From Cyanophora paradoxa CCMP329 (lineage: Eukaryota > Plantae > Glaucophyta), in assembly GCA_004431415.1 (NCBI GenBank), contig QPMI01000193.1:116787-180786 (forward strand): a DNA stretch of 64,000 bases, written 5' to 3'. Numbering within the stretch: position 1 is the stretch's first letter; each line of letters starts with the position of its first letter. This document shows, in pieces, positions 6,250-26,200 of this stretch. A program made the position numbers and the translations under genes. Below the pieces are notes generated by a model. The model worked only from the letters and a program-made list of their open reading frames with translations, searched no databases and was not told the origin of the DNA.

Positions 6250-6647
6250 CACCGTGGCACGCGCCGCTCAGCGGCTGCCCGCAGCCGAGCACGCTGCCCG
6301 GCACTCGTGCTTGAGCTTGCACCGCAAAACCGCTTGCGCCGCTGCCTAGCTGCGCCGCTGATCGCAGCAGAGCACGCCCGGCCGTCCAGACCGTGTTCTC
6401 TAGATCTTGCTGCGCTCAGCACGCCGCCGAAATCGAGCTTATACCGCAGTACCGCGTGCGCATGCGCCGCTGCCCGCAGCCGAGCACGCGTGACCGAGCC
6501 GAGGGGTCGCGCGCGAAGCGCGCGACCCCGAGGGGAGGACTCTGCGCATGTGCGTGCCACTAGGACTCTTTCATTAGATCTAGATCCCGGTTCCCCCCTT
6601 GCACGGAAGTTGCACCCCCGGCGCGAAAATCGCGGCCGGGCCACTAG
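6250..6647 (+). mobile_element. 3' portion of a non-autonomous Helitron/Helentron-like element (copy C); 5' boundary approximate
   Basis: Ends in CCCGGTTCCCCCCTTGCAC, a GC hairpin (CCCGGCGCG-AAAAT-CGCGGCCGGG) and CTAG, as at 28921 and 36294. 6344-6490 is repeated at 7463-7605 inside copy A. Confidence 0.65.
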
Positions 6648-8418
6648 TTGCAAGGGGGGAAAGAAGACCGAAGGTCTTCCCCCCTTGCTTCCCGTTCCCT
6701 CGCTTCAGCCAAAAGTTTTCTATGAGGCCATTTTCGAGGTCCAGTATGCAACACCAGAAAAAAATGATGCTTTATTCGCGTTCCGATTGGCTCGGTGGAC
6801 CGGTCAGCCTTCGACTTTCGAGCGTCAAATGTTGAAAAATTACCGGATGAGTTGTGGTTAGGGGTGAAACCTGGGCGAAGTCTTTTTCCACTTGCGCTAA
6901 ATAAATGTTCAGTCGAGGGGAAAAAGTGGTTTCACAGCTCGTTTTTTTTCCTAATCGACTCGACATGCCCGTTGTATGGGCAAGGGTAGCCGGCGATCGC
7001 GATAACTTTTCACCCGTCGCAGAACGGCTAGTCTCCTCGCAACAGCTTGTAGCCGGCAAGCTACCGGGTAGAATGCACTAGCTTGCGCCGGGGAATTCCG
7101 AACACCCGAGGGGAAATTGGTCAAAAACCGGATTTCGGCCGTGTCGGGTCGACCGGTAAAAAAAACGAGCTGTGAATTTTCGAGGGGAAAACGAACTTCT
7201 CCTCACTCCGGTCTTTGAATTTCTTGCGCGGTTATGCATGGAACCAGTTCTCCCTAGCTGTCTCCTCTAGATTTCGGCTTCGTCGCAGTGCATGCGCCTC
7301 GTACGCCTTGCGCATGCTCTTCGTTGCGCGGTTCTGCATGGATCCCGGAACGTTAACCACTTCTCCCTAGCGCTGTCTCCTCTAGATTTCCACTTTCTCG
7401 CACTGCGCCGCGTACGCCGCACGGTACCCGTGCCGCCTGGACTACTTTTGACTGCATACGGTGCCTAGCTGCGCCGCTGATTGCAGCCGAGCACGCCCGG
7501 CCGTGCAGATCTAGACCGTGCTCTCTTGCTGCGCTCAGCACGTCTCCGAAATCGAGCTTATACCGCAGAACCGCGTGCGCTGCGCATGCCCGCAGCCGAG
7601 CACGCCGGCCGGGCCGGGCGCTCTTGTTGCGGTCGACACTCCGCTGCTCGGCTTCTCGGTTTCGCCGCGGTGCTTGCTTCGGCAGATTGCCCCGCAGCCT
7701 TATAATTATGCCCGGTAGCTATAGTAGCTTCGCCAAATTGCGCGCGTGAGTCTGCTGCTGTGCAAGTCCGCATCAGATGGGACGGCGAGCTGCGCATGCA
7801 GCCGCTTCTGTGCCCGGAGACGTCGTCCCGGGGCGGGACTTTTTTCCAAATAACTGTCGTCCTGTGCAGGAACCTTTCTCGAAGCGTGTGCGCTTCGATG
7901 CAGCTATCATCATGGCTATTACGAACGCCGGCCCGCTACGGCCGCTGGCTGCACTGCAGCTTAAGCTTCAGCAGTGTTTGCAACAGCCGCCAGTTACCTT
8001 ATTCAGCAGCAGCTCAGCGGAAGCCCTTCCCTTGGCGGGTTTCAGACGACGATAAGAGGCGCTCGAGGCGGCGGGACGCCTCACCATGCTCTTGCAAGAC
8101 GGCGTTCTTCAGGACCGGCGCCGCTGGCTGCCGCTCATGATCACCCCCAAGGTCGACTTCCGCCCCGATCCCCTCCAGAAGGCCTGGATCGACTATGTCT
8201 ACGGCGAGCCCTCTGCAGACATCACCATCATCTTTTAGCCAGCTGTTCAGGGTTAGCGGTAGGCCGTGCGAACAGAGTTGATGCGGAGCGTTTTTTGGCT
8301 CCAGAACAATCTTTCATATAGTGTGCGCTGAGTCTGTCGACGTCCTTTCATTTGCTCTTTTTTTATTCGATTTCATCGCAGCGTGTGCTTATCGGGCCTT
8401 TTCTATTATCGGGCCTTT

Positions 8419-9906
8419 TTGGAAACGGGGTAGGGCCCCCGTTTTCGGTAACTCACAAAATGACGAGTCTGCTCATCTCCCGATCCAGCTCCGAGCTCTT
8501 AACCCAGTGTTAGTGCATGCATAAGAGCCCCGAATTCGTTGTCAGAACCCGGAAAGAGCGGAATGCTGCGCGGAAAAAAGGACCGGACCCTTTCCTAAAC
8601 TATCCCTTGCAGCGCCTGATCCTGTGGTCGCATAGGGGCCGGACCAAGTGCATAAGAAAGCTCTTGCAATGCTCGGCAGAGCTTGTCATACATGCCAGTG
8701 CTCGGGAAGCAGCGCGTGGCGCGCTAGGCCGCATCAAGTACCTGTTGTACCGAACGCGGAATAACTTGGTGGCCTGCGGCCAAAAGGTCGGCGCTAGCCG
8801 TTCTTGCTTCAGCTTCGAGCTTGATCTCGAGCTTGAGACTCGCGATGAAGTCTGATGGTTTGAGCATTGAGCTTGAGCTCAAGCCACAAAGCCTGTGCTC
8901 AAGCGGAACGCGCTTGACAGCGAGCCAAGAGGCTTAATATAGAGCTCGAGCTTGAGCTCGATCGAGTTTGAGCTCAAGTTCATCGACCGGCTCTCTGTTA
9001 TTACCGAGTGTCGCCGCTCGGTTGTACCCGTCGCTCGCGATCGAAGTGTGCACCGAGTCGCTTCTCTCCTTGCGCGCGGGGGCGTCCTTGAGCATGTCGG
9101 GCATCAACTACATCTACGATTTAGATGTTTGAACGCGTTTCGGAGCTCCCACCGTGCCTGTATCGCGCAGCTGCAGAAGAGTCGCACACACATCGCGATC
9201 AGCAATTTCTTAGGCGAAGGCTTGTTTTTACGTGTAATCGCGTCTTTCGACGGCCACGCTTTCGGATCTGAGAAAATGGTCTGGAGATATTGACCTCCTC
9301 TACACTTTGAACGCGATTCCTGTTCGTCTGGTTCGTTCCTAGTCGAGTGCGCTCCTGCCAAAGAATTTGTATGAGAGCCATGAACTTAGAAGCAATTAAC
9401 GGCTAGCGCCGAAAAAAAGAGCTCCTGCGAGTTTCGGCCTATCGAGTTGCAGTACCCGTGCATTAAGCCGGCGAGCTAGCCGACAGGCTCGCTAGCTGGC
9501 CAGCGTAGCTAGGTGAGCTCCGGCGCCGGCTAGCGGCTTGCAGGACTTCAATTCGGCGCGCCGCGGCGCCGGCCGCCCGGCGCTGGCGCCGCCCCGGGCC
9601 ATGGCCAGCTGCAGCCTGCAGGCTGTACGGTTGCCGGCCGGCGCCGCGGCGCTGGCCACCTCAGCTCCGGATCCGCACTGCGGCAGCTGCGCATGCCGAT
9701 GCATATGGCGAGCTCGAGCTGATATCGATGCCATGATGCGCGCGCGCATGCGCAGCTGCACTGCGGCAGCTGCCGCAGTGCAGCTGCGCATGCCGATGGC
9801 GAGCTAGCTTATAGCGCTCGCCGAGTCAACTCGGCGAGCGCGAGCACCCAGCTAGCTCGACCTAGGCCTACCCCGTTTCCAACCGGCGGCCGCCGGGCCG
9901 GCCCAG
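8419..9906 (+). mobile_element. Second family of Helentron-like non-autonomous element, nested in copy A
   Basis: A 16-bp inverted repeat, TTGGAAACGGGGTAGG (8419-8434) / CCTACCCCGTTTCCAA (9867-9882). The left arm is part of a local hairpin (AAACGGGG..CCCCGTTT). The right arm is followed by a GC stem-loop and CCAG|T. Confidence 0.55.
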
Positions 9907-10029
9907 TCAGAGGCTCATGCATATGATCAGCGGCTCAGAGCCCGAGAAGAGGCCGCCGCGTGCTAGTCTATTTTTTTTAATCATAATCTGTGTTCAACGG
10001 TTTATCTTTAACCTTCGACCTGCCGCGCG

Positions 10030-10285
10030 TGTCGGATGAGAGGATTCCCACCCGGTGCAGCGTCCGTGCGGTCACGCACGGGCTGGGGCTGTAGCTGGGA
10101 GCACAAGTGGTCTATTCACAAGTGTACCCGTCCAGGGATCGCGTACCCCCAAACGGAGTCGCGCCCGGCGCTAAGTCAGAATACAGAGAGTGCTAGAGCT
10201 AGCTGCTCGATAGCACTAGACTAGGGCTAGCGGCTACGCATAGACTGCCGGCTAGCCTAATCCGAGGGAATCGCGGCACGCGACA
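10030..10285 (-). repeat. 3' LTR
   Basis: TGTCG...CGACA termini; no difference from 28433-28688 seen by eye. Confidence 0.97.
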
Positions 10286-10297
10286 ACTCCTCACTCT
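10286..10297 (-). other. Polypurine tract
   Basis: AGAGTGAGGAGT on the minus strand, immediately upstream of the 3' LTR. Confidence 0.7.
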
Positions 10298-10974
10298 GCA
10301 TACGGTGCGTCCTCGCACCGGACCGCGCCAAGCCGAACGTCGAGTCTGCATGCTCGACGGGGCGTCCACCCCACCGCCGGGGTGTGCACCAACCACGGCA
10401 GCGACAGGGCGGCGGCGAGTGAACTCCTCTCGAAGTAGAATGTCCGTCGTCAGCAACCAGATATGCCAGGTAGCATAGCTCGCGACCGAAATAGGAGCCG
10501 ATACCAGCATAGTGCATGTACCTAGGCAACCCCAGGCCAAGCTCGAAAGATGGAAAAGCATAGAACTCGAAACCCCCAAAAGCTGGCCCAAACTCGCTCC
10601 AACGGCGAGAGCCGAAGGAGAGTGGCACGGATGGGAAGTTTCACCGCCTCGGGAAGAAACCAGCGAGGAGGTATCCGGGCCGCCCATCAGGCCCAACGAA
10701 AGGATAGGGCACGACTGAGTGCACCCCCAGCCAGCAACCTCGAGCCCCTCACGGACCCGCAGGCACCCGGGAGGCCTACACCCAGCCACTCTCCACGAGC
10801 GACGGGCCCAGATCCCAGAAAATGGAACGAAAGGCCCAGATGGCGCCCCGTGATTGGCCACCAGCCAACCCACGTCCCACCTCGGAAGCCAGGGCTGAGG
10901 CAAAGCGGGCAAAGAAATCTGCCCCACGGCGCAAGCACAGCGATCGCAAAGGGAACAGCAATGGGACGAGCTTC

Positions 10975-13635
10975 TCACAGGTCGTCGACCAAAATCGCGT
11001 CATCCATCTCAACCTCGTCGCCCTCGGCAGCCCGCTCGGGGCCCTCGGCGTCGACGTCAGGGGCGAGAGGTGGATTTTGTTCTTGAGCGGGCGAGTCCGC
11101 GAGTGCGGGGTCGATCGCCGGCTCGTCGGCGTTCACAGCAGTCTTCCGAGGCCGACCAACGCGGGGACGGGCTTGAGACTCGGAGAGACGCGTGCGGAAC
11201 GGAAGCATGCAGTCGATGTGGGCAACAGTCTCACGCAGAGGACGGGTACGGGCATCGTCCTTGGCGGAGTAGGGCTTAGCCGACCCCTTGACCGTGTAGG
11301 TGTAACCGCCAGGGTTAACACCAGTCACAGTGTAGGGCCCGACCCACGAATTGTACAGCCCTTTGTTGTGTTCGCCCATCCAGCACAATACCTTGTCGCC
11401 AACCTCAAAGCGGCGACGATGAGGCGGGTTGCCGGTGCGAGCAACCATGCGGTTCCGATAGAACCGACGGTACTCGCGCGAGGCAGCGTCGGCGCTCGCG
11501 GCAGCTCGCGTCATCGCGAGAAGGTAATCAGCCGGGTGCGTGTGGTCGGGGTTCACGAAGCGGACGCCGGCTCCGAAGCGCACTTCGCAGGGCAGGTGCA
11601 CTTCAGAACCGCGGTGCAAGACCATCGGGGAGAACCCGGTGGCGGAGTGCACGGTGGTCCGCAACGCGAGAACGATATCGGCGTTGTAAAGAGGCCAGTC
11701 AGAGAGCGGCCGCTTGTGCTCACGGCACATGGCGTAAGCGAGAGTCTTGTAGACTCCGCCCAGGCGCTCGGCGCCGCCGTTCGAGGCGTGGTGGTAGGCG
11801 GCCGCGTGCACGAACCGGGTACCCTTCTCCTTGAAGAACGCGTTCCACGCGCCCCCAACGAGTTGGGACCCGCGGTCCGTCAGGATGCGCGCGGGCACGC
11901 CCTCGTGCGTATAGAAGTCGATCGCGGTGGCGAGCAAGGCCTCGCCGGAGATACGGGAGAGCGGGTAGATATAGCAGAACTTGGTGTATGCGTCGACGTA
12001 CGCGATGATGTATCGCGAACCGTCTTCGTGCATATCCAAGTGGAAGATATCCACCTGCCACAGGTCTCCCTTGCCCGAAGGCTGTATCACCTGAATGGCG
12101 GTACGGCGGGGCTTCGCGGCCTTCGCGAACTGACAGTGCGGGCATGACCGCACAAAGCGAGCGATGGAGGCGTACATGCCAGGCCACCAGAACCGCAGGG
12201 CGATCCGACGGGCTATCACGGGCGCGCCTCGATGGGCCCAGCCCTCGTGATAGGCGTAGAGCACCCTGTCGATCCAAGCGTCCGGCAAGACGGGTAGGAA
12301 CCGGCCGGCAGGGACCAAGGGGTTGCGCTCGATGACGCCGTCGTCGGCCAGGCTGAACTCGCCGGCCAGGCGTGCAAAGCGCTCCTTGGCCCGCAGGCAG
12401 TGAGCGCAGCTGGGCGAGCAGGGATCTGCGTCGCGCCTCGAGCCGCGGGTACAGACAGTTGGATTCTCGCCCTCTGCGTGGAAGGCGAGAAGCTTCTTGC
12501 AGAAGGAATCCTCCTTCTGAGCGGCGAGCAGACGCTTGCGCTTCTCGGGCGGGAACATACGGCGCAGCGCGTCGGGGAGCGCCCCATCGACGGCTGGCGA
12601 GGGTCCGCAGGCCCACGCGTCGAGGACGGTATCCACGAAGACCGGCTTGCACGGCGGGCGAACGTCCCGGCCTCTAGGGTCGAGTTCTACCCACCGCTGC
12701 GGGGCAGCGGCCTCGGCGGCGACCGTCTCAGGCTCGAGCGGGGCGGCGTCGTCGGAAGCCTGCCCGCGGGCAGAGGGGCGACCTCGAGCCCGCGGCGCTG
12801 GCTTGGGGTCCGGGGGGACCGGCCGAACGCGGATCTGGTGGCGAGCAGTCTCCGGGGAGAGCGAGCGTCGGCGCGGAGGCCCGGGAGGCGGCTCGCCCTC
12901 AGGGTCCTCCGGCTCCCACTCAATATGAATCGGCACCGGCCGATCCGAGGGGTCGACCGGGGAGCGCCAGTGGCGCGTGTTGTACTCATCTCGAGGCTGC
13001 CGCCTCAAGGCGGGGCCGCGAGGGAAGAGCGCGTCGGGATGCAGGGGCCGCGGCTCGGCAAATCCCTTGGCGCCCCACCGACGGGGCCCGGTTTCCGAGC
13101 GCTTCGGGACTCGCTCCGCAAGAGCGAGGGGGAAGCCGTCAGCGTCGCAGGCGTCGGAGGGGACAGGCCCTTCCGGCAGCGACTCGTCATCGATCTCGCC
13201 CGAGGCCTCGGCCTCTGCGTGAGCGTCCTCTAGCAGCGCGGCCGGGGCGCCCAGGTCGCCCTCAGGGGCGTCGGGCATCTCCGCGTCCGAGGGAGCCTCG
13301 CGCTCCTCGACAGCGGGCGCCGGGCCCGGCTCTCGTCGTTTCGGGGGCGGCGAGACCGACTCTGGCGCGGGAGGCGCGAAGCGCTCTGGGGCGGCCCGCG
13401 CTCGCTTGCGCGTGGCGGCGTCAGTAGCCGAGGCGGAGGCCTTGGCCTCAGCGAACCCAGCCGACGCAGCAAGCTTGGCGAGCTCGCGGGGCAGGCGTCG
13501 CGGCGCGCGCTCTGGCGGCGGGGGCTCGGCGTCGGAATCGGTTTCCGCAGCACCGCCAGCCTCACCCTCAGGCTCGGGCGCGGGCGCTTCAGGGGCGCCG
13601 GCGTCGGGCTCGGCCTCAGGAGCACTGGCTGGCAC
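10975..13635 (-). CDS. Pol C-terminal part: long acidic/Pro-rich spacer plus integrase
   Basis: HHCC zinc motif (AYHEGWAH...CPHC), DDE core (WQVDIF, ILTDRGSQ, SNGGAERL) and GPY motif (WVGPYTV); no chromodomain visible. Confidence 0.95.
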   Translation of the reverse strand: MPASAPEAEPDAGAPEAPAPEPEGEAGGAAETDSDAEPPPPERAPRRLPRELAKLAASAGFAEAKASASATDAATRKRARAAPERFAPPAPESVSPPPKRREPGPAPAVEEREAPSDAEMPDAPEGDLGAPAALLEDAHAEAEASGEIDDESLPEGPVPSDACDADGFPLALAERVPKRSETGPRRWGAKGFAEPRPLHPDALFPRGPALRRQPRDEYNTRHWRSPVDPSDRPVPIHIEWEPEDPEGEPPPGPPRRRSLSPETARHQIRVRPVPPDPKPAPRARGRPSARGQASDDAAPLEPETVAAEAAAPQRWVELDPRGRDVRPPCKPVFVDTVLDAWACGPSPAVDGALPDALRRMFPPEKRKRLLAAQKEDSFCKKLLAFHAEGENPTVCTRGSRRDADPCSPSCAHCLRAKERFARLAGEFSLADDGVIERNPLVPAGRFLPVLPDAWIDRVLYAYHEGWAHRGAPVIARRIALRFWWPGMYASIARFVRSCPHCQFAKAAKPRRTAIQVIQPSGKGDLWQVDIFHLDMHEDGSRYIIAYVDAYTKFCYIYPLSRISGEALLATAIDFYTHEGVPARILTDRGSQLVGGAWNAFFKEKGTRFVHAAAYHHASNGGAERLGGVYKTLAYAMCREHKRPLSDWPLYNADIVLALRTTVHSATGFSPMVLHRGSEVHLPCEVRFGAGVRFVNPDHTHPADYLLAMTRAAASADAASREYRRFYRNRMVARTGNPPHRRRFEVGDKVLCWMGEHNKGLYNSWVGPYTVTGVNPGGYTYTVKGSAKPYSAKDDARTRPLRETVAHIDCMLPFRTRLSESQARPRVGRPRKTAVNADEPAIDPALADSPAQEQNPPLAPDVDAEGPERAAEGDEVEMDDAILVDDL

Positions 13636-15433
13636 AGGGGCCGCGACTCCTCCTCTGCATAAGAGGAGCGGCCCGGCGGGGAAGAGGGGGCGCTCGCAGG
13701 CGCCGCCCGGGGCGCTCGGCGTCTAGCGGCTCGGCCACCCTCGGCTGGGGCTTCCGCGCGGAAGCCGGCGGAGTTGGCGAGCTGGCGCAGGGCCCGCTCG
13801 GTCGGGCCAGCTGCATCCTAAAGATGCCCAGCGGGACGTCGGGATCCTCAGGCTCAGCCCCTACAGCATGTTGCGGGATGCCGAAGCCTTCGGCGCCCTT
13901 GTAGGCCGCGGGCTTGGACGAGGAACCGTCTGCACCGCCTGGCTGCCAGACGGGGTGGTCCTTAGGGAGACGCGAGCACGCGTCGGGACCCCCGTTCTGC
14001 TTGCCAGGGCGGTAGACGATCTCAAAGTCGTAGGCCTGCAAGAGCAGGGACCAGCGACCGAGGCGGCCCGTCGTCGGGTCCAGCGTCTTCAGCCACTGGA
14101 GGGCGTGGTGGTCGGTCCGCACCAGGAACTGGGGGCCGCCCAGCAGATAGTGGCGCCAATACTTAATGGCCCAGACTACTGCGAGGCACTCCAGCTCCGT
14201 AGCGGAGTAGTTCATCTCGGCCGGCAGCAGCGTGCGGCTGATGAACGCGAGCGGCCGCTCGACGCCTTTGTCGTCGGCCTGGCTCAGAATTGCGCCGATA
14301 GCGTAGGTGCTGGCGTCCGTCTGGAGAATGAAGGGCTTCGAGAAGTCCGGGAACCGCAATATAATATCGCGGCCCAGGAGTTCTTTCAGCTCCTTAAAGG
14401 CGCGGTCGGCGGGGCCGTCCTCTGGCCAACTCCAGACGGCGTCCTTCAATAGAAGGCGCTGCATGGCGTGCACCACTTTGGAGAAGTTCTCGACAAAGCG
14501 GCGGTAGTAGCCGGCGAGGCCGAGGAACGAGCGGAGCTCGTCCGCGTTCTTCGGCGTCTGCCAGTCCGTGATCACCTTGGTCTTCGCAGGGTCCTGGCGG
14601 ATCCCTTCGGCGGAGATGCGGTGGCCGAGAAGGTCGATTTCAGGCACGCAGAAGCGGCACTTCGACGGCTTCAGGCGCAGGTTCGCCTTAGAGATCGTCT
14701 CGAAGAGCGCCTTCAAGTCTAGAAGGTGCTGATCGATGGACGGTGAGAAGACCGTGATATCGTCGATGTACGCGACGACGCAGGTGGTCAGCAAGGGGCC
14801 CAGGATCGCAGTGATCGCGCGGGAGAATGCCGCGGGCCCGTTCGTGACCCCAAACGGCGTAACCTTCCACTGAAAGTGACCCCAGGGGACCACAAATGCA
14901 GTGTAGGCTCGGGAGCCGGGGTGCAGAGGCAGCTGCCAGAAGCCGGCAGTCGCGTCAGCAGTCGAGAAGACCATCGAGCCGCGGAGGCGCTCGAGCTGGT
15001 CGTCTATGCGGGGTAGGGGAAACACGTCCCGCTCGGTGATCTGATTCAGCCTCCGATAGTCGACACAGAAACGCCAAGTGCCGTCCTTTTTGGGGGCCAG
15101 CACTACCGGCGAGCCATATGCCGCTTGGGAGGGCTCGATCAGCCCAAGCTCAAGGAGTTTCTGAATTTCCTTGCGGGCGTGTTCCTCGGCGTGCGGGTTC
15201 ATACGCCGCGGAGGCGTGAACACCGGAAGGCGAGTCGTGAGTTTGATCACGTGCTCGTAATAGAGCAGGTTGCTGGTGCCCTCTTTGGCCTCGACCTTGT
15301 CTGCGAAGACATCCTTGTAGCGCCGCAGGAGCGCGTGAAGTTCGGCTTTCTGCGCCGTCGTGATTGACGGGTGAGAGCCGAGCTCAGGAATCTTCTTCAG
15401 CAGCTCTTGCCACTCCTCCTCTGCATTAGGCAC
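13616..15433 (-). CDS. Reverse transcriptase-RNase H (Ty3/Gypsy type)
   Basis: KKDGTWRFCVDYRRLN, FPLPRIDD, PFGVTNGPAAF and YIDD; RNase H motifs QTDASTYAIGAILSQ, ELECLAVVWAI and TDHHAL. Confidence 0.97.
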   Translation of the reverse strand: MPNAEEEWQELLKKIPELGSHPSITTAQKAELHALLRRYKDVFADKVEAKEGTSNLLYYEHVIKLTTRLPVFTPPRRMNPHAEEHARKEIQKLLELGLIEPSQAAYGSPVVLAPKKDGTWRFCVDYRRLNQITERDVFPLPRIDDQLERLRGSMVFSTADATAGFWQLPLHPGSRAYTAFVVPWGHFQWKVTPFGVTNGPAAFSRAITAILGPLLTTCVVAYIDDITVFSPSIDQHLLDLKALFETISKANLRLKPSKCRFCVPEIDLLGHRISAEGIRQDPAKTKVITDWQTPKNADELRSFLGLAGYYRRFVENFSKVVHAMQRLLLKDAVWSWPEDGPADRAFKELKELLGRDIILRFPDFSKPFILQTDASTYAIGAILSQADDKGVERPLAFISRTLLPAEMNYSATELECLAVVWAIKYWRHYLLGGPQFLVRTDHHALQWLKTLDPTTGRLGRWSLLLQAYDFEIVYRPGKQNGGPDACSRLPKDHPVWQPGGADGSSSKPAAYKGAEGFGIPQHAVGAEPEDPDVPLGIFRMQLARPSGPCASSPTPPASARKPQPRVAEPLDAERPGRRLRAPPLPRRAAPLMQRRSRGPCASQCS

Positions 15434-16405
15434 CGGCCGCGGTGCCTCAGCGGGCTTCGCGTCGGGTGCTGCAGTCGTAGGGGTGGGGCATCGGGCCGGG
15501 CCGAAAGCGAGGCTGTGACCACACTCTGGGGTGGGGCCTCGGCGTCGGCGACCGGTGCGGCCTTGCGGACCGTAACGTCGCCGCGCATGGCGCGGACTGC
15601 ATCGAGCAAGTCGCGCTCCGCTTTTTCGGAGAGACCGGGGAAGGTCGAGCGCAGGGTGGCGTCTCTGGGGACGGACACTGCCTCGACTGCGGCGACGAAC
15701 TCGTCGACCGAGGGCCTGTGATCGGGGCCGGCGTTGGGGACGCGCTTCGTGACGACGTGCTCATAGCATCGTCGTCGAGGCTAATGATGCTCATAGCATC
15801 AAGGTCCTGCAACGGCCGGTCGGCTGTGTCGAAGGGCAGCTCGCCAAACGTGACGACTATATCGTCGACGTCGTAGGGCGGTGCGCGGGGTGGGTCGGCG
15901 GGCTCAGCAGGCGCTGCGCTAGACAGAGCGCGCTGCTTTTCCGCCTCATCTACGACAGAACGTAGGGTGGAGATTATTTTCTCAACGTCTTTGGCGGGCT
16001 CATATGCCGCGCCAAGCATGCGTGCTTTTCTATTAAAGTGGCGGAGTCCAGTGCGGCGTTTGGCAGGCACGATTCGCAGCCGGCGAATCAAGAGGTCTGT
16101 CAATGCACTCGCACTACAAGGCATTTGCTCAGGTTCGTACTCAAAATCACCAGGCGGTAGGGCGACCGCCGAAGCGACCGCTACTACCGATCCTAGCGGC
16201 AGGGTTACCGGCTGCCGGCCAGGATTGCACAACCGCACGTGAAACATTTTGTCTCCCGGGTGATTATGCAGCTGGTAAGGGCAGAGTACGCCCAAGGCTT
16301 GCGGGGACTCCGGCGACGGCTCGACGTAGAGGTGCGGCAACTCACGCGTTGCCGGGCCCTGCCCATTGAGCGTGCATGGGACGAGGGCCTCTCCGACGGG
16401 GAGCT

Positions 16406-17713
16406 TTACTGGTCCCAGGACTCGGACCAGGATCCCAAGCTGGTCCGGAGCCGAAAAGGGACGACGACTTCGCGGTGCAGGTGGTCACGGGCCCGGAGGC
16501 ACCACCCGGACAGCGTCGTGTCGATCTGGCCGTGGACGGCCTGGATCGCGTCCAGGCCGAGCAGAATGTCCGGCTCAACGCCCATGGCGCCGCGCGGGAC
16601 GACGAAGACGCGGCGGCAGAAGCGGAGCGAGCCCAGAACGAAGACTACGTCGGCGCGGCGACAACGAATTTTGTCCCGGTCCATGAAACCGCGGACTATC
16701 GTGTGGCCCTCGACGTAATTGACTTCGTCGGGCGGCAGGCGGTCGAGGACTTCCTGGGGAACTACAGTTCCCTGGGCGCCCGTGTCGACAACAATGCGAG
16801 CGGGCCGTTCAGCGCCGGAGCGGCCGTTCGGCAGGCGCATAGCAATGCTGCCGTGAATGTGCAGTGTCTTTGGCCGGAAGAATTCCAGGGCCCGGTCGCG
16901 CGGGAAGCTAGGTCGGGCGCGGCGGACGTGGAATTCTGGTTCCGGCGGCGCGGGTGGACCCGACAGGTCCGTTGCGCTTGCGGTTGGGGATGGGGGCCGG
17001 GACTGGCGAGCCGCGGCTCGCTCGGCGACTCGGCGCTGCTCTGCCTGGTCGGCCAACGGCGAGGGCTTGGTCCGCTTGCGCGGGCCCGGGCCGTGGCGGT
17101 TGGCGTAGAGCAACTCGTCGCTGGGCGGGTCATAGCCGGCGCGCGTTCCCAGCGGCGTCTCCTCTGCCGGGCGGGGCACGGCGAGGGACGGGCGGTTTTT
17201 GGAGCCCAGGGCGTGGCCCGCGGGCATGAGAGCTTCCTCGTCGGAGGTCAGGCCCTCGGGGTAAATGATCGCGGCGGCCTCGAGCGCGTTCTGCGGGGCG
17301 AACGCCGCTGTCGGCGCTGAACCCGAGAACCACGCGCGAGTCGGCCGTGGCGGGGCCTTGTAGCCCGTTTTGCGCATCGAGATGCCGTAGCGGTCCATGA
17401 TCGCCTGATGCACCGCGCGTAAGGCGGGCTCCAGGGTCTTTGGATCGACCTGCAGCATTTGCGCGGGGTTCGACAGCCAGTTGAAGACCAGCACGGTCGA
17501 GCGCGGCCCGAGCTTGTGCAGCAGGCGGCGGGCCCAGGCCGGCGCAGGCTCGCGGCTCTTTGGTGGGGCCGGGGCGGGCGGCGCGGCTGGCGCCGGCGGC
17601 GCGACTGTTTGAGCGGGCGGCTCGTGGACGACCGTCTGGACGCGGCGGATCGAGATGTACTTCTCGTCCGCCGGCACCGGCACAGCGGCCCGGACCGACG
17701 CCGGCGTATGCAA
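16406..17713 (-). CDS. Retropepsin-like aspartic protease region
   Basis: IVVDTGAQGTVV active site and DILLGLDAI C-terminal motif. Confidence 0.9.
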   Translation of the reverse strand: MHTPASVRAAVPVPADEKYISIRRVQTVVHEPPAQTVAPPAPAAPPAPAPPKSREPAPAWARRLLHKLGPRSTVLVFNWLSNPAQMLQVDPKTLEPALRAVHQAIMDRYGISMRKTGYKAPPRPTRAWFSGSAPTAAFAPQNALEAAAIIYPEGLTSDEEALMPAGHALGSKNRPSLAVPRPAEETPLGTRAGYDPPSDELLYANRHGPGPRKRTKPSPLADQAEQRRVAERAAARQSRPPSPTASATDLSGPPAPPEPEFHVRRARPSFPRDRALEFFRPKTLHIHGSIAMRLPNGRSGAERPARIVVDTGAQGTVVPQEVLDRLPPDEVNYVEGHTIVRGFMDRDKIRCRRADVVFVLGSLRFCRRVFVVPRGAMGVEPDILLGLDAIQAVHGQIDTTLSGWCLRARDHLHREVVVPFRLRTSLGSWSESWDQ

Positions 17714-20700
17714 GTGGGCGGGAAGGTCACAGGGCGCGCGGGCCTCGTGCCCGCGGGGTGACGACGCTTCTGCGACGGTGTATACCGCGAAGAAGGGCTT
17801 TGGTTGGCTTTTGCCGCGGCCTGCATTGCCACGCGAGCCTCGTGCTGGCGCTCGCGCTCAAGCAAGGCTCGCCAGTCTTTGGTGCGATCGAGCGTGGCCC
17901 GCAGAGCCTCGAGATCGGCACGGGGCCCGTCTGGGAGGAGCGAGATCATCATGCCCGTCTCCCCAGCGGAGAGGCTGATCTGCATATCGATGCCGGCCCG
18001 GAGGGCGCGGCAGACGTCTTCCAGGGCCCGCCGAGCGGCCTGCTTTGCCTGGGCGAAGGCTTCGTCTGAGACCTTCTGAGCGCCGCCGGGCTTGGCGCGC
18101 GTCTCGGCGTGGCTAGCGCGGTGCGGATCTGGCGCTCGACTGTTTGAAGCCAAAGCCCCAATTCCGTGACCCCTTGGCCCCGGATCTTCACGTCGCGGCA
18201 GCTCGAGCACTCGCGCACAAACTGCAGGAGGCCCCTGCTGGGACGTCAGCCTGGGGGTTGAAAGTCGTGGCGGCGGAGGCGCGCGGCGCGGCCACTGAGG
18301 CGCGCGGCTGCTCCGGCGTCGACTGGTCTGCGCGCGGCGGCTCGGCCTGGCTCGCACGCGATGACCGCTCCTGGGCCTGAGAGATGGAGGCGCGACCCTC
18401 CGCAGGCTTGGACGGCGCCGCCGACTGCGGACCGGCCTCGCTCTGCCCCTCAGGCCCCTCTAGAAAGGGCTGCTGGCGCTCGTTGCGTCCGCCGTCGGCG
18501 GCTGCCCACCGATGGTGGCGCGGCGGCGCGGGCGAGGACGACGCGGACTGAGCGTCCATCTGGTTCTGGAGCTTGATCAGGACCAGCGCGGTGGCCTGCT
18601 CAGCTCGCGCGGACGCCGAGAGCGAGTCTGGCATCTCAGCGTACTGCGCCTTCCAGACCATGTCGAAGAGCTCGCGCAATGTGGGCGGGCAGCCTCGCAG
18701 GCGGGCGTCGTTCTCGTGCCGCTTGTACGCAGCGTCTACGGCGCCGCGCGGCGGGTCCGGCGGGCGGCGAGAGGACTGGCTGCTGCGAGGGCTGCGGCGG
18801 TCTCGCGGCGAGGCGCGGTCGCGCGAGCCCTTCTTCGAGCTTTTGCGCCGCTTATCGTCATGGCGGGGCTCCGGCTCGGGCTCCGATCGCGCGAGCGCGA
18901 GCGGGAGCTAGAGCGGGACGGTGTTCGGCTCCGGCGGCGTTCCCGCGAGCCTCGGCGAGGGCTCCGCCTGTCGCGAGTGTCGCGAGCCGTGGACCGTCGG
19001 CTCGGCGGGCTGCGGTCGCGGCGCGGCGGCGAGCGATCACGGCGGTCCGGGAGCGGCGGCGGGAGGCCTCGCGGTCCCGGCGGTCCGGCGAAGGGCGTCG
19101 GGAGCCCTCGCGATCGCGGCGTTCCAACGAACGGCGGGACGGCGGCGGCGCCGGGATTGCCGGTGGGGCTCCGGGGAGCGCTCGCGGCGCGTGGAGGGGC
19201 CCGCGTCTCGCGCCTGTCTGGGGTGCGAGAGCGGCGACTGGACGGGCTCGGCGCGGCTCGGGTGTGCGCGAGCGGCGCTGAGACGAGGCCCGCTCAGGGT
19301 CCGGCGGGCCTGCGACGCGCGACTGGCCGTGTCGTCCCTGCGGCTCGAGCTTGCCTCGGCCTGGCGGCTCGAGCTGGGCGGCGGCATCAAGGTCCGGGAG
19401 GGAGTCTCAGCCGGCGGGGCTTGGTCTGGCGGAGCGCTCTCGGCGATCCGCTCGACCTTCACCTTCCCGTCCGAGACGGTTACGCGCATGGTCTTGGGGT
19501 CATACCCCTGCTGCCGCGCGAGGAACGCATCCAGCCCGAACGGGTCGTTCGGGTCGACAGCGGGTTGTGCGGGTTGCGCCTGGCCACCGCCGCGGTCGCC
19601 GCCACGGTCACGGTGGCCTCGGCCGTCGCGACCGCGGTGCCGGCCGCCCCGCTGGTGACCCTGCCCGCGGCCGCCTCGGCCAACGGCCTGGCCCGCGTTG
19701 CGCCGGGGCCGCGCCTGCTGCGGCGCCGTCGGCGGCGCGGCGGTCTGCGCAGCGGCCTGCGCCGGCGCGGGCGCCGACGGGGTGGCGGATGGCGCCGCCT
19801 CGGCGGGTCGTCCGCGAGCCCGCCGACGATGGTTGAGGGCGGCTGGAACCGCACGCCCGCCCACGTCGCGCGGACCGCTCCTTCGTAGATCGGCTGGTAC
19901 GGCGTGCGAACCAGAAGGCTTTCGGCCTCCTTATCGACAGCCGCCGTCGCAGTCAGGCTGCGCCGGGCCGAGGGCGCGGCGCCCTTGTTCTGGACCGCGT
20001 CCCACATCAGCGCCGGGCGCAGAGCCTCAACGTCCCAGTCGGGGAGCACGGGGTCGTCCGTCTCCCAGTCGATCGGGCGCGCGAGGCGGATCGCGACATT
20101 CAGATCGGCGTAGAGCGAACGGAGCATCGTCTCGAACTGAGGCCGCAGGGTATAGCCTCATCGGTAAAGATGAGCCCCAGCGGGAAGTTCCCGGGACAGT
20201 TCTCCAGCTCCTCGGCGGCGCGGGCGGCCTCAAGGTGGCGCTGTATCCCACTCTTGCCCCGGCGCCAAGGTCATCGCCGGCGGGCCACGCGTCCTCGGCG
20301 CCGGCCATCGGGGGCGAGCCGAGCTCAAGACGCTGGTACCCGAGACCGTGCGGCATGTTTGTGAGGTACGCGCGGATGCCGTCCGCCAGCGCGCGGGCAT
20401 CCGAGTCGGCGCACTCATCCCTCGTCATAGTGCGCAAGAGGGCCCTGAAGACCTCGGCCACGTTCTGGGCATGGCGGCGTTCAGGGGCGCACAGTTGTCC
20501 ACCCGCTGCGCGAGCAGCGGGATGCGGGATACTGGAAGCCCTGCAGCATCGCGAGCAGGATCCGCCCACAGATCGCCGCACGACCCTCGTGGTCCGGCAC
20601 GACCGCATTGTTCGGGCCAAACTTCCACGCAAGCGTGGGATGACCGTCCGGGTACGTCGGCCTCGCGTCCGCGTCGAAGACCTTCTTGCCCTGAGGCAAG

Positions 20701-23700
20701 ACGTCGGACCCGCGGTCCGGCTTGGCCGTCGGCTTAGTCAGGAAGGCCTCGTGAATGAACACCATCAGACCGTCCGGCACCACGCAGCGGAACGAGTTCA
20801 ACACCTTGTTGAAGTCATCCATGTGATCGGCGACCGCCCGAGCGATCTCGGGGACGTAGTCAGCCGGGCGTTCCGACTCGACGTCCATGGCCGCAGCCGA
20901 CAGAAAGTCATCAGCCCAGTGCTGGCTGCGGAGGTGCTTGCCCGGCGCGTGACGCTGGAAGAAGCGCGCGTGCCAGGCCAGCGTAAAACCGATGGCCGTC
21001 GCGAGGATTTCCTCTTCCGCCGGGATCGGCGCCCAAGGGCACGTCCCCGGAGGTGAGTTCGGGAAAGGCGGCAGCTCGTAACCGAACGCGGTGACGAGCC
21101 GCGGGTTCGCGTGGCTCTTCTTGGGCTGGCTCGCAAGCTGGGCGACCGTCACTGCGAGCCACAGCTTCTTGTTCTCGCGCTGGTGCGGCGCGCCCCCTGC
21201 GACGTCCTTGTCGCAGGCAGCGTTCGGCGCGGGCGTGGCCGTGCCTGCCACGAGGCGGGGCGCGTAGATGCGCCGCGTCTGCAGGCGACCCTCAACGTTC
21301 TCGACGCGCTTGTCGGCGAGCGGGCGCAGCAGGGCCAGCACGGCGACGTCGCGCGCGAAGCGGGTCGCGAACGGCGTCCTGGCGTCCTCCTCGTTCGGGT
21401 CGGCGATGTTACCGCCCAAGACTGAGGTGTGCAGGGTGGGCGCTCGGGGTGCGGCATGTACGGCGGCGGGGCGTTCCGCGCGCCGCCGCCTTCGTGGAAG
21501 AAGGCGGTATACAGCACCCGCGAGACCTGGCCCAGGGTCGAACACACGGGTGCGTGGGCTGTGCCCTCGTGCGTGAGATCCCAGGCGCCCGTGTACGTCG
21601 GGACGGCAGACTGTGCGGTACGGGTCCCGACCGCGAGTACTGCACGATATCCAAGCTGACGCCGCAGGCGGCGTGCGGGAATGCAAGCCCCTGCAGGTCG
21701 AAGAGCTCCGGATCCTCGTCGAACGGCCGCTGAGGCGGGCCTACGAGCGAGAACCAGTTCACTATGCCGCGCGCGGCGGGGCCGACGCGCTTGAGCATAG
21801 TTGAGCACAGCTCGCCCATGTGCTGGTCCTGCAGCGTGAGCACGTCGACGTTGTACTCGTCAACGTCGCCGGCGTGCTGCCAGCGCAAGGGGTAGCTGAT
21901 CGCGGGCAGCGTTGCCCATTCAGTGAACCCTGGCTCATAGCATTCCAGGGGCCGGAAAAACGCGTGTTTCCGGTCCATGTACTCGCGCAAGAGCTTGTGA
22001 TCGTTGGCGTACGTCGGGTCCGCCAACGAGAACAGCGGCCGCGGCTGCCAGTCCTTGTGCGGCTCGAACGGCCTGTGCGCCGCCGCAGGGATGGCAGCCG
22101 GCGCCTCTTCCTTCTCGCCCTCTTCCTCTTCGCTCTCGACATGGTCAATGTCGAGCGGCTCGAGGCGGGGCTCAGGCTCATCGGCGATGTAGGTGCCCAC
22201 AAGCGCATCGTCGAACGTGAACGACTGCCGTGCAGCGTGACGCTCGAGGGCATGCAAGACCTTCTCCTGGAAGGCCGCGCGCTGGGCGGTCAGGGCCAAG
22301 CCCCTGTGCGGGTCGCTCTCGGCGGCTTCCTCCTGCGCGCGCGTCCCTAGCTGCAGGTGGCGGCGCAGCCAGCGAACCCCGTACGGGAACTCCAGGCCGG
22401 CGCGTTCCGCGGAGGAACGGTGGTCCCAACCGCCTCGGCGCGGAACATGGTGTGAGCACGCAAGAGGTACTGGGCCCACTGCGGCGGGATGACGGCCGCG
22501 CTCGGGTTGAAGCGGCCCCCGTGCGTCCACCGCGGCAGGCGCGTGGCAGGGATCGTCCAACGCAGAGTCAGGAAGTGCTCCAACTGCTGCTCCGTCCACT
22601 CATGCAGGTGGAACGGGAGATCGTGGGAGTGGGGCGTGACGGGGCCACGGAGCCCCAGCGCGATCATGAAGAGCTCGAACGCGGCCGCGTTGAGCCGCGC
22701 GAGGCGAACGGTGCGATCGGCTCTGAGCGCGACGCGGCCCTCCGGCGGCTCCTCGTGCGGCACGGGCGGCCCATCCAGGCGGTTCTGGATTGGCGTGCTC
22801 CTCTCGCTGGCGAGAAACGCCTTGAGGTGCGGGACCCGCAGGTCCTCGAACGTGCCCTTCAGTGCGTCGAAGGGGATGCTCCAGCGGTGGGCGAGATCAG
22901 ACCGGGCCGTCATGGGCCACTCGGTGATCTGTTTCCCCTCACAGAGCCGAGGCGGGCACCCCGGCACTGCGAGGACGCCGCTCATCACGCCATAGCCTCG
23001 TACAGGGCCCGCTGGCTCAGGTTCTCATCGATAGCCGACGGCGGCGGCGGCGGCGGCGCTTCCTCGGGCGCCTCATCGCCGTCGCCCCGCTCGCCCATCT
23101 CGGCGTCTTCCCCTCAGCCTGCCCACGGCGGGCGCTGCGGGTTCGTGGCCCCTGCGAGCCGCGCCCACGGGTGCTGACGCGCACGACCCCGTCCCGCGGC
23201 CACGCTCGCCGCGACGGGCGGCCTGCCGGGAGCCGGCGCGGTCGCGCGCGCGACGTCGAGTAGCGGCTCGCTCAGGCGAGGCTCGACAGGCGCGGGCTCA
23301 GTGGCGGGCGGCGTCGGAGCGGCGGTGGGCCGCGGCGCCATCGGCTCGCAAGCGGCGGCCATGTTGCCGCGGCGTGCAAGGTCACGAGCTTCGCCGTCGG
23401 TGCAGGCGGCGGGACAGGAACGGGCGCCGGCCGCGCCGGCGCTGGCGGGTCCCTCGGCGAGAGCGCCTTCACAGGCGGGCGCGGCGGCAGGCAGGCCTTA
23501 GCCTCCTTGATCGTCGCGCTGACGGCCTTCGCCGTGTAGGCGCCCGTCGTGTCCGACGCCGGCTTCGGCGTGGTGGGCAGGTCGTGGAGAGGAGTGGGGG
23601 TGCGGCTGCCTGCATCCGTGCGCCACTTCTCCACGAGCGCGATCATGTCCTTGACAGCCTCGTCATTGAAACCGGCCCGCTTCTTCAGCAGCCTACGGAA

Positions 23701-26200
23701 TAGAATGACGAGGTGGGCCCGGTCGCCCGCCTTGGCCCCCTCGATGTACCGGAGCAGCTCCGCGGCCCCGGCGGATCCGGGAACCGTGCGGGCCCAGGCT
23801 GCATCGCACAGGGCGGTGAGCGGCGGGCGCGGGCCGAGCTGGCTCAGCACGTAGAGCTCCTCAGGCACGATCGTGGGCAGCTGCCCGCCTCGCGTCGTGC
23901 CGTGCAGGGGCAACTGCGTGGTGCGCGTGATCGGGCGCACGCGGCCGACCCTCCACGTGCCAGGCTCTGCCCCGTGCAGGCGCGGCCAGTGCAGCCAGGT
24001 GTCGCACAAGTGCAGGTCCCGGAGGTGCAGAACGCGGGCGGCGGCGACGCGGGGCTCCACCGGAACGCGTTCAACCGTGCGGGACTCGCCCTCGCTCACG
24101 ACCGGGAAGGCGGGGCACGGCCGTCGCGGTACGCGGTCAGACGCTCCGCGAGCGCTGCCCGCAGCCATCCCTCGGCGTCCCGATCCGAGCGGAGACGTGC
24201 CCGCCCGGGATCGGAACCTCAACGGAGGCAGCCAGGACGGCAAGCGAGTGAACGGCTTCCGTGAACTCCGAGTCCGAGGGGACAAGAGGGTTCCCGTCGG
24301 CCAGGGCAACGGCGCTCTTGTGGGCGTCGTGGGGACCGGCGCGGCCGCCGATGCAAGCCACGGTCTTCCACTGGATCGCGTGCTCGAGGGCCAGCAGGGC
24401 GAAGCCATAGGCGTCGACCCGCGCGTCCACCATGAGCGGCTCGGCGAACTTAAAGAAGCGGCCGAGGATCTTCTCGACGGCGCCGGCGGTGCCCGGGGCA
24501 CCGTAGTCGACGCGGTGCAGGAAATAGCCCGCAACAGTCGAGGCGCACGCAAGGCGGAGGCGGTCCTGTGCCGGCAACAGCTCGCTCAGCTCGATTAGCT
24601 GGCGCGGCCCGACACTGTCATCTCGTGCGGCTCGAGAGAGGCCGCCACGGGCGAGTGCTGGCCAATGCTCCAGTGGCGGCGGTATGGCTCCAGCCAGCCG
24701 GCGGTAGCGACGCACTCGTCCCCAAGCTTCGTAAGCTTGTGGGCGTCGGGCTCGACTGCGGGGCGACCCTCGGGCGTGAGGCCCTCGGCGTGCGGCCACG
24801 CGTGGCCCCGGCCCACTTCGCGGCGACGCGAGAGGCCTGGTGCGTGAGGCTCATGATTTCATAATAGTGCGTCGGCCAGGCGTGAGCCAGCGTGTCCTGG
24901 GACAGCGGGTCATGCCCCAGCATCTGCAGGAACGCAGTGGGGAGGGTCCGCGAGCCGAGGTACGTGCTCTCGGTGGCGAGCGGCTGAGAGAACGCCGCAA
25001 GCAAGAAGGAGAGCGTCTGGCGGGTGCGGGCCGGGCAGCGGAACGCAGTGGCATACCACTGCTCGTCCCGGACCTCGATCAGCCCCTCGCTCACAGTGCA
25101 GCCGCAGTGAGTCTCGCACGGCGCTGGTACAGGAACGCCGCGCGGTCGAGCGGGACCGACGCGGCGCCCTTCAGCTTGTGCGCGTCCACGTTCCAGAGAG
25201 GAACGGGCCCAGCTCGTGCTCGCGGCCCTTCACCGGCTCTAACTCAACGGCTCCGAAGTGAGTGAGGTCTAGGCCGGGGCTAGCGCTGAGGAGGCGAGCG
25301 CGGTTGAGGCGCAGGGTCTCCTTAGACGCTACGGTCGCGTCCTCGTCGGCGAGGGAGGCGCCGTCGTCGGTCACCTCGAGGCTCGCTACCGTCTCGGCCC
25401 CGAGGAGTACCCCAGGCAGCAGCCCACGCCGGCGGCGGGGTCCGCCGGAGCCTCGGCGGCGGCGGTCTCGGGGACCGACTTGGTGGGAGCGAGCTCCGTC
25501 GCGGGCTCGGGACCCTTCGCTTCTGCGTCAGCGCCCTCGACCTCCGTTGGGTCCGGGGCGGCCGCCAAGAGGAGTGCGACCTCCTCAAGGGCGGCGTCCA
25601 CGATGCCGGCGGCGAGCTCGGCGGGGAAAGAAGTCGGCACGGGCGTCGGCGCGGGACCCTTCGCTGCTGCGTCAGCGCCCTCGACCTCCGTTGGGTCCGG
25701 GGCGGCCGCCAAGAGGAGTGCGATTTCCTCGAGGGCGGCGTCCACTGCGTCGAACGCGACCTTCTTCTCCCCTCGTCCAGGCCCGACTCCGGGCGGGTCG
25801 GCAACAGGTCCTGCGCCTCGCAGGGGCCGGCCTCTCGGCTCCCGTGGGGCACAGGTCTGGGCGGCTTTCCCGGACAGCTGCACTACTGCGATCGCGAAAG
25901 CGGTGGCGGCTGCGGCGACCGCGTTGAGAGCGGGGCCGTCCCGGGGTCCTGCAGCGCGGCGGCGTGCGCCGCGGCCGCTGCGGTGAAGGCTCGGAAGGTA
26001 TCGTCGACCAACGCCTCGTCGCTGCGCACGATGCGCACACGGTACACGTGCTTTTCCTTGCCAAGCTCGGCGGGCGCCGGGCCGCCGTGGGCCCCGACCC
26101 GTGGCCGCCGGTCGGCGCGGGAAGCAGTGCAGTCGCGGACGGGCCGGCGGCGCCGCTTCGGGCAGCCTGCTCGAGCATGGCGCGCGCGATCGTGAAGGCG
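17714..26200 (-). CDS. ~8.5-kb run of overlapping, frame-shifted ORFs of unknown function between Gag and protease
   Basis: Protein-like, same-strand ORFs abut one another (25094-24618, 24799-24137, 24552-23272, 22988-22347, 22599-21409, 21686-20481, 20632-20027, 20127-19480, 18679-18188, 18357-17248). No domain recognised. Confidence 0.7.
25509..25745 (-). repeat. Two ~93-bp coding direct repeats within the retroelement
   Basis: Encodes DAALEE(I/V)ALLLAAAPDPTEVEGADA(A/E)AKGP twice. Confidence 0.85.

What the first reader, a model, noticed from the sequence alone, without database searches (positions are those of the whole stretch)
6381..6590. Fold-back micro-insertions distinguish paralogous copies: a palindrome-generating mutational process
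Seen: at homologous positions, repeat copies differ by short insertions that invert or duplicate the adjacent bases and create palindromes. ctct[agatct]tgc (6398) vs ctcttgc (7523). caga[tctaga]ccg (7506) vs cagaccg (6387). ttagatc[tagatc]cc (6574) vs ttagatccc (28865). gtcgatct[agatcgatatct]gcc (36175) vs gtcgatctgcc (28706). In one duplicated intron, ccttg[catatgcatgcgcatg]ttgac (54964) vs ccttgacttgggaattcccaa (41500). The young LTR interior and conserved exons largely lack such tracts. Inference: a recurrent repair or replication mechanism (hairpin opening with P-nucleotide addition, or snap-back template switching) iteratively rewrites unconstrained or silenced DNA. It may act as a genome-defence-like process.
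Basis: partly seen in the sequence, partly recalled or inferred. Interest (0 to 1): 0.8.

Follow-up and report, generated by a model that had tools for sequence, protein, structure and literature searches.

The report
Stereotyped palindrome-making six-base insertion scars
The non-coding DNA of this GC-rich algal genome (probably the glaucophyte Cyanophora paradoxa) is peppered with one stereotyped scar, three bases XYZ turned into XYZ + reverse complement + XYZ; the scar is real, recurrent and apparently undescribed, and most likely marks hairpin-type break repair such as transposon excision.

Summary
All four cited short indels are present. They are one event type: a trinucleotide W becomes W.rc(W).W, a 6-bp insertion that creates two overlapping hexamer palindromes. 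The 12-nt example is two nested events, and the intermediate form occurs in independent reads.

In 17.9 kb of non-coding DNA there are 202 such 9-mers against about 9 in shuffles. They hold 54% of all palindromic hexamers there. No target motif or flanking microhomology was found. The young Gypsy interior and an exon-rich gene show no excess.

Of 13 six-base indels between repeat copies, 11 are perfect W.rc(W).W. A second class, W-C-rc(W)-G-W, occurs 27 times against 0.85 expected; its mirror G..C occurs once. Exact contigs from 2012 and 2024 runs cover four of the sites, so assembly error is unlikely.

Best reading (about 0.5): scars of two-ended breaks whose ends both carry W and pass through hairpins, most likely excision footprints of a transposon with a 3-bp target duplication and C...G ends (CACTA-like). 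A host template-switch process remains possible. The genome-defence idea is not supported.

Other first-stage readers noted the same scar on other pieces of this genome. I found no paper describing it.

The parts
6399..6407 (.). TCT -> TCTAGATCT scar (cited example 1); the paralog at 7523 has TCT
   Evidence: An X1 contig of high word depth lacks exactly these 6 nt.
7507..7515 (.). AGA -> AGATCTAGA scar (cited example 2); the paralog at 6387 has AGA
   Evidence: Exact contigs spanning 7428-7575 occur in runs X2 and X10.
6576..6584 (.). AGA -> AGATCTAGA scar (cited example 3) in the tail of a high-copy repeat family
   Evidence: The three-copy alignment shows that both other copies lack it.
6457..6465 (.).
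   Evidence: Collapsing 2+2 scars raises column identity of this pair from 0.80 to 0.88.
36180..36194 (.). Two nested scars (cited example 4): TCT -> TCTAGATCT, then ATC -> ATCGATATC inside the product
   Evidence: The one-step intermediate (GTCGATCTAGATCTGCC) is the consensus of loose read ends in X1 and X2.
7791..7799 (.). TGC -> TGCGCATGC scar; the 6 nt are absent from other copies in all four runs
   Evidence: table 4 ('7791 left out 6'); sequence.
9699..9718 (.). Two scars, ATGCATATG and GAGCTCGAG, both absent from the nearby repeat copy at 9790-9806
41020..41028 (.). CAG -> CAGCTGCAG scar in copy 1 of the 4-kb segmental duplication
42044..42052 (.). CAC -> CACGTGCAC scar in copy 1 of the segmental duplication
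42265..42273 (.). TCG -> TCGCGATCG scar in copy 1 of the segmental duplication, with flanks 100% identical
8958..8963 (.). Two-base version of the scar (TC -> TCGATC, a 4-bp insertion)
   Evidence: A paralogous X18 contig leaves out 4 nt here; sequence. The k=2 class counts 132 against 62 outside k=3 sites.
9992..10002 (.). Example of the second class, GTT-C-AAC-G-GTT (W-C-rc(W)-G-W); 29 such sites lie in the window
   Evidence: 27 against 0.85 expected in non-coding DNA; the mirror G..C occurs once against 0.85.
28701..38600 (.). Main palindrome-rich non-coding stretch (introns and intergenic, 51-57% GC); 7 scars in the 28-30 kb bin and 23-42 per 2 kb across 30-38 kb
   Evidence: Perfect scars alone make up 8.2% of 30-38 kb.
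10025..28688 (-). Young Ty3/Gypsy element, used as an internal control without excess scars
   Evidence: LTRs at least 99.6% identical; RT, RNase H and integrase domains; 23 collapses against 15.3 expected.
28987..30924 (.). About 1.9-kb element with CACTA-type inverted termini (CACTACCGTGTAATAC); candidate relative of the scar-making element; no clean 3-bp duplication recovered

Best explanation
Shown: a single stereotyped insertion recurs throughout unconstrained DNA. A trinucleotide W becomes W.rc(W).W (+6 bp). A minor class is W-C-rc(W)-G-W (+8 bp). Two-base versions occur, and four- and five-base versions are rare. Events hit essentially any sequence, stack on earlier products, decay by substitution and are absent from young or constrained DNA.

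Inferred: each scar records a two-ended break. Both ends carry a copy of W, which means a 3-bp staggered cut, as in a target-site duplication. Each end passes through a covalently closed fold-back (hairpin). After opening, the two 3' tails anneal through the 3-nt inverted copy and are filled in. This gives W.rc(W).W without loss of flanking bases.

If each hairpin tip keeps one nucleotide of an excised element whose ends are 5'-C...G-3', the same joining gives W-C-rc(W)-G-W.

The most likely source is therefore excision of a cut-and-paste DNA transposon with a 3-bp target duplication and C...G termini (CACTA/En-Spm-like). A persistently hopping family leaves one scar per hop.
For: - The direct-inverted-direct form with a sharp 3-nt unit counts 202 against 8.9. 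No other P-nucleotide combination comes close.
- Flanks are kept intact.
- The second class has constant, strand-symmetric C and G: 27 against 0.85, with mirror and other spacer pairs at background. Constant bases not templated by the flanks fit element termini.
- The C and G appear together or not at all. One-sided forms count 7 and 8 against about 2.6 expected, whereas about 140 would be expected if the two ends behaved independently. This fits a concerted, two-fold symmetric reaction.
- The palindromes have no spacer, which points to enzyme-made hairpins rather than snap-back.
- A CACTA-type inverted-terminus element lies in the window.
- Unchecked first-stage notes report CACTA elements with 3-bp duplications elsewhere in this genome. 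These are leads only.
- The rate is feasible. From the density of perfect scars I estimate about 0.1 scars per substitution. This needs only rare hops per generation.
Against: - No occupied site (an element flanked by W...W at a position where a paralog has a scar) was found in the window or in the laid contigs.
- Known plant transposon footprints are heterogeneous; here one product dominates the classes tested.
- Two-, four- and five-base versions keep the inverted copy in step with the direct copy. A template switch gives this automatically; a fixed target duplication does not.
- The density, about one perfect scar per 90 bp of neutral DNA, is unprecedented for footprints.
- No transposase gene was identified here.
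Confidence: 0.5

Rival explanations
1. A host replication or repair error. The polymerase copies W and switches to the complementary strand, a displaced short flap or the other end's short 5' overhang, for exactly those bases. It then switches back. This would be a micro-scale inverted triplication.
For: - The inverted copy always matches the direct copy in length across unit sizes 2-5.
- There is no target motif (at most 0.03 bit per position).
- The scars are spread over all unconstrained DNA.
- The ratio of perfect to one-mismatch sites fits steady accumulation.
- Larger relatives of this form are known: small inverted triplications in FEN1/rad27 mutants (PMC13334657), fold-back insertions at breaks (PMC11724301) and short-range template switching in apes (PMC7954356).
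Against: - It does not explain the constant, symmetric C...G class.
- There is no junction microhomology. Run lengths fit random flanks.
- Spacer-less 3-nt inverted copies are hard to prime.
- The two-fold symmetry argues for two equivalent ends rather than one nascent strand.
Confidence: 0.22
2. A host-encoded or domesticated hairpin-forming nuclease makes 3-bp staggered breaks without carrying an element. The breaks are resealed through the same hairpin route.
For: - It shares the same chemistry as the best explanation.
- It would account for the uniform product, the lack of occupied sites and the lack of a target motif.
Against: - The constant C...G bases have no source without element ends.
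- No candidate gene was seen in this window.
Confidence: 0.15
3. A genome-defence process, like repeat-induced point mutation, that targets repeated or silenced DNA.
For: Old repeat fragments at 6-10 kb are heavily scarred.
Against: - Single-copy introns and intergenic DNA are the most heavily scarred.
- The young Gypsy has no excess. If the organism is Cyanophora, this is the kind of element reported to be methylated (PMC12344493).
- The 93%-identical duplication has few scars.
Confidence: 0.03
4. An assembly or polishing artefact.
For: The region is high-copy, and short-read contigs are fragmented there.
Against: - Exact contigs from runs of 2012 and 2024 carry four of the scars.
- Copies with and without a given scar coexist in the same runs.
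Confidence: 0.01

Closest known systems
Excision footprints of plant hAT and CACTA transposons (hairpin model; from my own knowledge: Coen et al. 1986, Saedler and Nevers 1985, Hermes hairpins in Zhou et al. 2004)
   Same: The target duplication is retained on both sides, with an inverted copy of flank bases between. Flanking DNA is otherwise intact. CACTA elements have a 3-bp duplication and C...G termini.
   Different: Known footprints are heterogeneous and sparse. Here one product dominates the classes tested, and perfect scars alone make up 8% of a non-coding stretch. No occupied site has been linked to a scar yet.
P nucleotides at V(D)J coding joints (from my own knowledge)
   Same: Spacer-less palindromic additions templated by the end itself, arising from opened hairpins.
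   Different: P additions are 1-4 nt, variable, one-sided and come with nibbling. Here there is an exact 3-nt inverted copy plus a direct copy.
Small inverted triplications and DUP-TRP/INV-DUP rearrangements (PMC13334657, PMC11293582)
   Same: Direct-inverted-direct order, with iterative template switching proposed as the cause.
   Different: Units of about 150 bp or kilobases, a 30-bp spacer and 6-bp junction microhomology. Here the units are 3 nt, with no spacer and no microhomology.
Fold-back templated insertions at yeast double-strand breaks (PMC11724301) and polymerase-theta templated insertions (from my own knowledge)
   Same: Short inverted copies of break-adjacent sequence.
   Different: Those are 5-34 bp, microhomology-primed and often come with deletions. 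None is stereotyped at 3+3 nt or genome-saturating.

Membership tests
Cut-and-paste transposon excision footprint (CACTA-like, 3-bp duplication) | A direct duplication of fixed length equal to the element's target duplication flanks the scar | tested here: met
   A 3-nt direct copy is found at 202 sites against 8.9 expected. Minor 2-, 4- and 5-nt versions also exist.
Cut-and-paste transposon excision footprint (CACTA-like, 3-bp duplication) | Bases between the duplications are inverted flank bases and/or element-end bases | tested here: met
   rc(W) alone is the major class. C + rc(W) + G is the minor class, at 27 against 0.85.
Cut-and-paste transposon excision footprint (CACTA-like, 3-bp duplication) | The homologous site in another copy or allele is occupied by an element flanked by the same duplication | tested here: not met
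   No occupied site was found among window paralogs or contig joints. With only 64 kb and one 3.6-kb read lay, absence is weak evidence.
Cut-and-paste transposon excision footprint (CACTA-like, 3-bp duplication) | A matching element family and transposase exist in the genome | tested here: inconclusive
   One CACTA-type inverted-terminus element lies at 28987-30924, without a clean duplication. No transposase was found in the window. Other readers' notes are unchecked.
Template-switch inverted triplication | Direct-inverted-direct order, with the inverted segment co-extensive with the duplicated one | tested here: met
Template-switch inverted triplication | Microhomology at the switch junctions | tested here: not met
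   The period-6 run lengths (9: 77, 10: 37, 11: 27, 12: 12) match those expected from random flanks.
Repeat-targeted genome defence (like repeat-induced point mutation) | Preferential action on duplicated or young repeated DNA | tested here: not met
   The young Gypsy gives 23 against 15.3 expected; unique 30-38 kb gives 110 against 3.3.

The most novel reading that the evidence does not exclude
The scars are made by a lineage-specific break-and-reseal reaction not described in any organism. It could be a host or domesticated hairpin-forming enzyme, or a persistently active element. Its single stereotyped product has built a sizeable share of the non-coding DNA: at least 8% as perfect scars locally, and more with decayed ones. 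It would also have made most of the short palindromes. On this reading, scar insertion is a major, measurable source of new sequence, at roughly a tenth of the substitution rate.
Probability: 0.35. Interest if true: 0.9.

Novelty: new variant of a known kind. Interest (0 to 1): 0.82.

Why it matters
- A single indel type at about 10% of the substitution rate would dominate non-coding sequence evolution in this lineage. It would explain why the intergenic and intron DNA is a chain of short palindromes.
- It would bias alignments. Two nearby scars are read as blocks of mismatches.
- Because the product is stereotyped, events can be counted, dated and reversed computationally. This gives a rare natural read-out of a break-repair or transposon-excision pathway.
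- It also offers a tool to clean up paralog and transposon alignments.
- Each scar adds two codons in frame, so it could also act on proteins.
- If the organism is Cyanophora, this is a basic feature of the reference glaucophyte genome that I did not find described.

Tried and rejected
- Ten literature searches found no paper on this signature.
- Rfam found nothing in the window.
- Pfam on host open reading frames found nothing.
- The protein atlas search on the reverse transcriptase did not help identify the organism.
- The look-up of encoding contigs with a window ORF found no record. The closest proteins exist only as EukProt entries without DNA, so I could not fetch more of the genome or other strains.
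- The four runs laid matched the window exactly in the listed unique-region contigs, so I did not look for polymorphism between samples.
- The contig joint 8754 -> 9407 has a 3-nt overlap and looked like an occupied site. It turned out to be a repeat-structure difference without inverted termini. Other joints were likewise not elements.
- A pair scan for CACT[AG]/[TC]AGTG termini gave one hit with a GGC duplication. Its left end is the conserved tail of another repeat family, so it is probably chance.
- An apparent excess of extended palindromic flanks was an effect of double counting multi-hit runs.
- Other footprint forms are not clearly enriched: W+W, W-CG-W, and one-sided W.rc(W) at 253 against 205.

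Full report
SETTING

The window is GC-rich (51-79%) eukaryote-like DNA. It contains the following.
- A young 18.7-kb Ty3/Gypsy element at 10025-28688. Its LTRs are at least 99.6% identical, and it encodes reverse transcriptase, RNase H and integrase domains.
- A 4-kb segmental duplication, 38620-42675 against 51999-56151, at 87-93% identity.
- High-copy repeat fragments at 6-10 kb.

The nearest relatives of the Gypsy polyprotein are EukProt entries named tig..._g....t1. That contig-naming style is used for Cyanophora paradoxa genes. Together with about 100-120 Mb of contigs per run and runs dated 2012, the organism is probably C. paradoxa. This is an inference; run names are coded.

CHECKING THE OBSERVATION

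The four short examples are present as written. They all reduce to one event: a trinucleotide W becomes W.rc(W).W. AGA becomes AGATCTAGA at 6576 and 7507, and TCT becomes TCTAGATCT at 6399.

In the 6340/7460 repeat pair each copy carries two private events on different trinucleotides. BLAST and MAFFT hide the first pair of events as a block of mismatches, because the two 6-bp gaps compensate. Removing the four scars leaves one 3-nt gap and raises column identity from 0.80 to 0.88.

In the three-copy tail family only the 6576 copy has the insertion, so that insertion is derived.

The 12-nt insertion at 36180-36194 is two nested events: TCT becomes TCTAGATCT, then ATC becomes ATCGATATC inside the new sequence. 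The one-step intermediate is the consensus of loose read ends in runs X1 and X2.

Example 5 is only partly explained.

Further paralog-supported events:
- 6457 and 7581.
- 9699 and 9710.
- 41020, 42044 and 42265.
- 7791, where 6 nt are left out in all four runs.

In all, 11 of 13 six-base indels seen between copies are perfect W.rc(W).W. One more is off by a single base, and one lies in a coding repeat. A random 6-mer fits the form about once in 4,000.

STATISTICS

- Window-wide there are 284 such 9-mers against 56.5 in dinucleotide shuffles. Units of 2 and 4 give ratios of 1.2 and 2.2.
- The most over-represented 9-mers of the window are of this form.
- In 17.9 kb of palindrome-rich non-coding DNA the count is 202 against 8.9, a 23-fold excess. 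No other combination of direct copy plus partial inverted copy comes close.
- The 202 sites form 167 independent runs. Their length distribution matches single events in random flanks, plus 13 second hits on the same site. There is therefore no junction microhomology.
- The reconstructed targets show no motif, at most 0.03 bit per position. All trinucleotide classes except AAA/TTT are hit, over about a tenfold range.
- 54% of palindromic hexamers lie inside such a 9-mer, where about 3% would by chance. The figure is 7% in the Gypsy interior. Isolated palindromic hexamers are barely enriched, 253 against 205. The triple unit is therefore the primary product, and the palindromes are by-products.
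- Iterative collapse removes 8.2% of the 30-38 kb stretch in 110 steps, against 3.3 steps in shuffles. The Gypsy interior gives 23 against 15.3, and the exon-rich 44-52 kb gives 4 against 1.3.
- The excess of perfect sites (193) is about equal to the excess of one-mismatch sites (198). This is what steady insertion with neutral decay would give. It implies roughly 0.1 events per substitution per base; this is my own estimate.

INDEPENDENT DATA

The 6-10 kb stretch is high-copy, with word depth up to about 60,000. Exact contigs from three or four runs, dated 2012 and 2024, cover the scars at 7507, 8942, 9035 and 9168. Copies with and without a given scar coexist in the same runs. An assembly artefact is excluded for practical purposes.

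A SECOND CLASS

Following a lead from other first-stage notes, I tested spaced forms.
- W-C-rc(W)-G-W occurs 27 times against 0.85 expected in the non-coding set, and 29 times in the window.
- The mirror G..C occurs once. A..T, T..A and C..C occur once or twice each, and G..G occurs four times.
- The form reads the same on both strands.
- The C and G come together. One-sided forms count 7 and 8 against about 2.6 expected, whereas about 140 would be expected if the two ends behaved independently.

Smaller and larger units also exist.
- Two-base units count 132 against 62 outside the 3-nt sites. One 4-bp indel of this kind at 8958 is seen in a paralogous contig.
- Four-base units count 7 against 0.8, and five-base units 2 against 0.03.

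MECHANISM

What is shown is the product and how it accumulates. The rest is inference.
- The two-fold symmetry and the intact flanks point to a two-ended break in which both ends carry W, that is, a 3-bp stagger.
- The spacer-less inverted copy points to enzyme-made hairpins rather than snap-back.
- If both hairpins are opened at least 3 nt from the tip, the two 3' tails share only the rc(W)/W homology. Annealing and fill-in then give W.rc(W).W.
- If each tip keeps one base of an element with 5'-C...G-3' ends, the same joining gives W-C-rc(W)-G-W.

A 3-bp duplication with C...G termini is the hallmark of CACTA/En-Spm elements. One CACTA-type inverted-terminus element lies at 28987-30924.

I therefore favour transposon excision footprints, at about 0.5. 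Four things count against this reading: no occupied site was found, the product is far more uniform than known footprints, the unit size varies in step with the inverted copy, and the density is extreme. A host template-switch process (0.22) or an element-free hairpin nuclease (0.15) remain open.

Genome defence is not supported. Unique DNA is hit hardest and the young repeat is spared. If the organism is Cyanophora, young elements are the methylated class.

COMPARISON AND NOVELTY

The nearest known things are listed below. All are larger, more variable or dependent on microhomology.
- Hairpin-model footprints of plant transposons and V(D)J P nucleotides (from my own knowledge).
- Small inverted triplications in FEN1/rad27 mutants, with units of 148/160/148 bp, a 30-bp spacer and 6-bp junctions.
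- Fold-back insertions of 5-34 bp at yeast breaks.
- Short-range template switching in apes.

None of the ten literature searches found this scar described for any organism, or palindromes discussed in the Cyanophora genome papers. Many first-stage notes on other pieces of this genome describe the same scar. These are unchecked and are not independent support, but they suggest the feature is genome-wide.

LIMITS

The analysis rests on one 64-kb window. The organism identity is inferred. No polymorphism data were available. No occupied site or enzyme was identified.

Noticed in passing
window 9746-9793 (within 9651-9804): A perfect 48-nt palindrome sits inside a 154-nt imperfect inverted repeat. 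One arm has acquired two extra 6-bp scars, which the repeat copy at 9790-9806 lacks.
   Followed up: partly
window 6549-6812; 35254-36305; 28860-28930: A high-copy repeat family (word depth up to about 60,000 in reads) whose tail ends in ...CCACTAG. At 6648 a tail abuts a head. This may be the rolling-circle-like family noted by another reader.
   Followed up: no
window 32306-32556: An exact tandem duplication of a 125-bp unit (100% identity), hence very recent.
   Followed up: no
window 1012-1040, 2144-2170, 52520-52555, 62655-62690: Long G homopolymer tracts of 15-35 nt in GC-rich genic DNA.
   Followed up: no
window 6603-6613: An 11-nt insertion private to one repeat copy. It duplicates TTGCAC around GGAAG and is not of the W.rc(W).W form.
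   Followed up: no
window 41514-41523: GGGAATTCCC in copy 1, where copy 2 has TTCCC. This is a 5-nt one-sided inverted copy of the right flank, without the direct third unit.
   Followed up: no
window 44000-52000, minus strand: An exon-rich gene with long open reading frames (250-300 aa) that carry a repeated motif but have no Pfam match. It is nearly free of scars.
   Followed up: partly
window 28955-28986: The left flank of the CACTA-type element collapses through two nested scars (GCTAGCGCT, then CAGCTGCAG) to CAG.
   Followed up: partly
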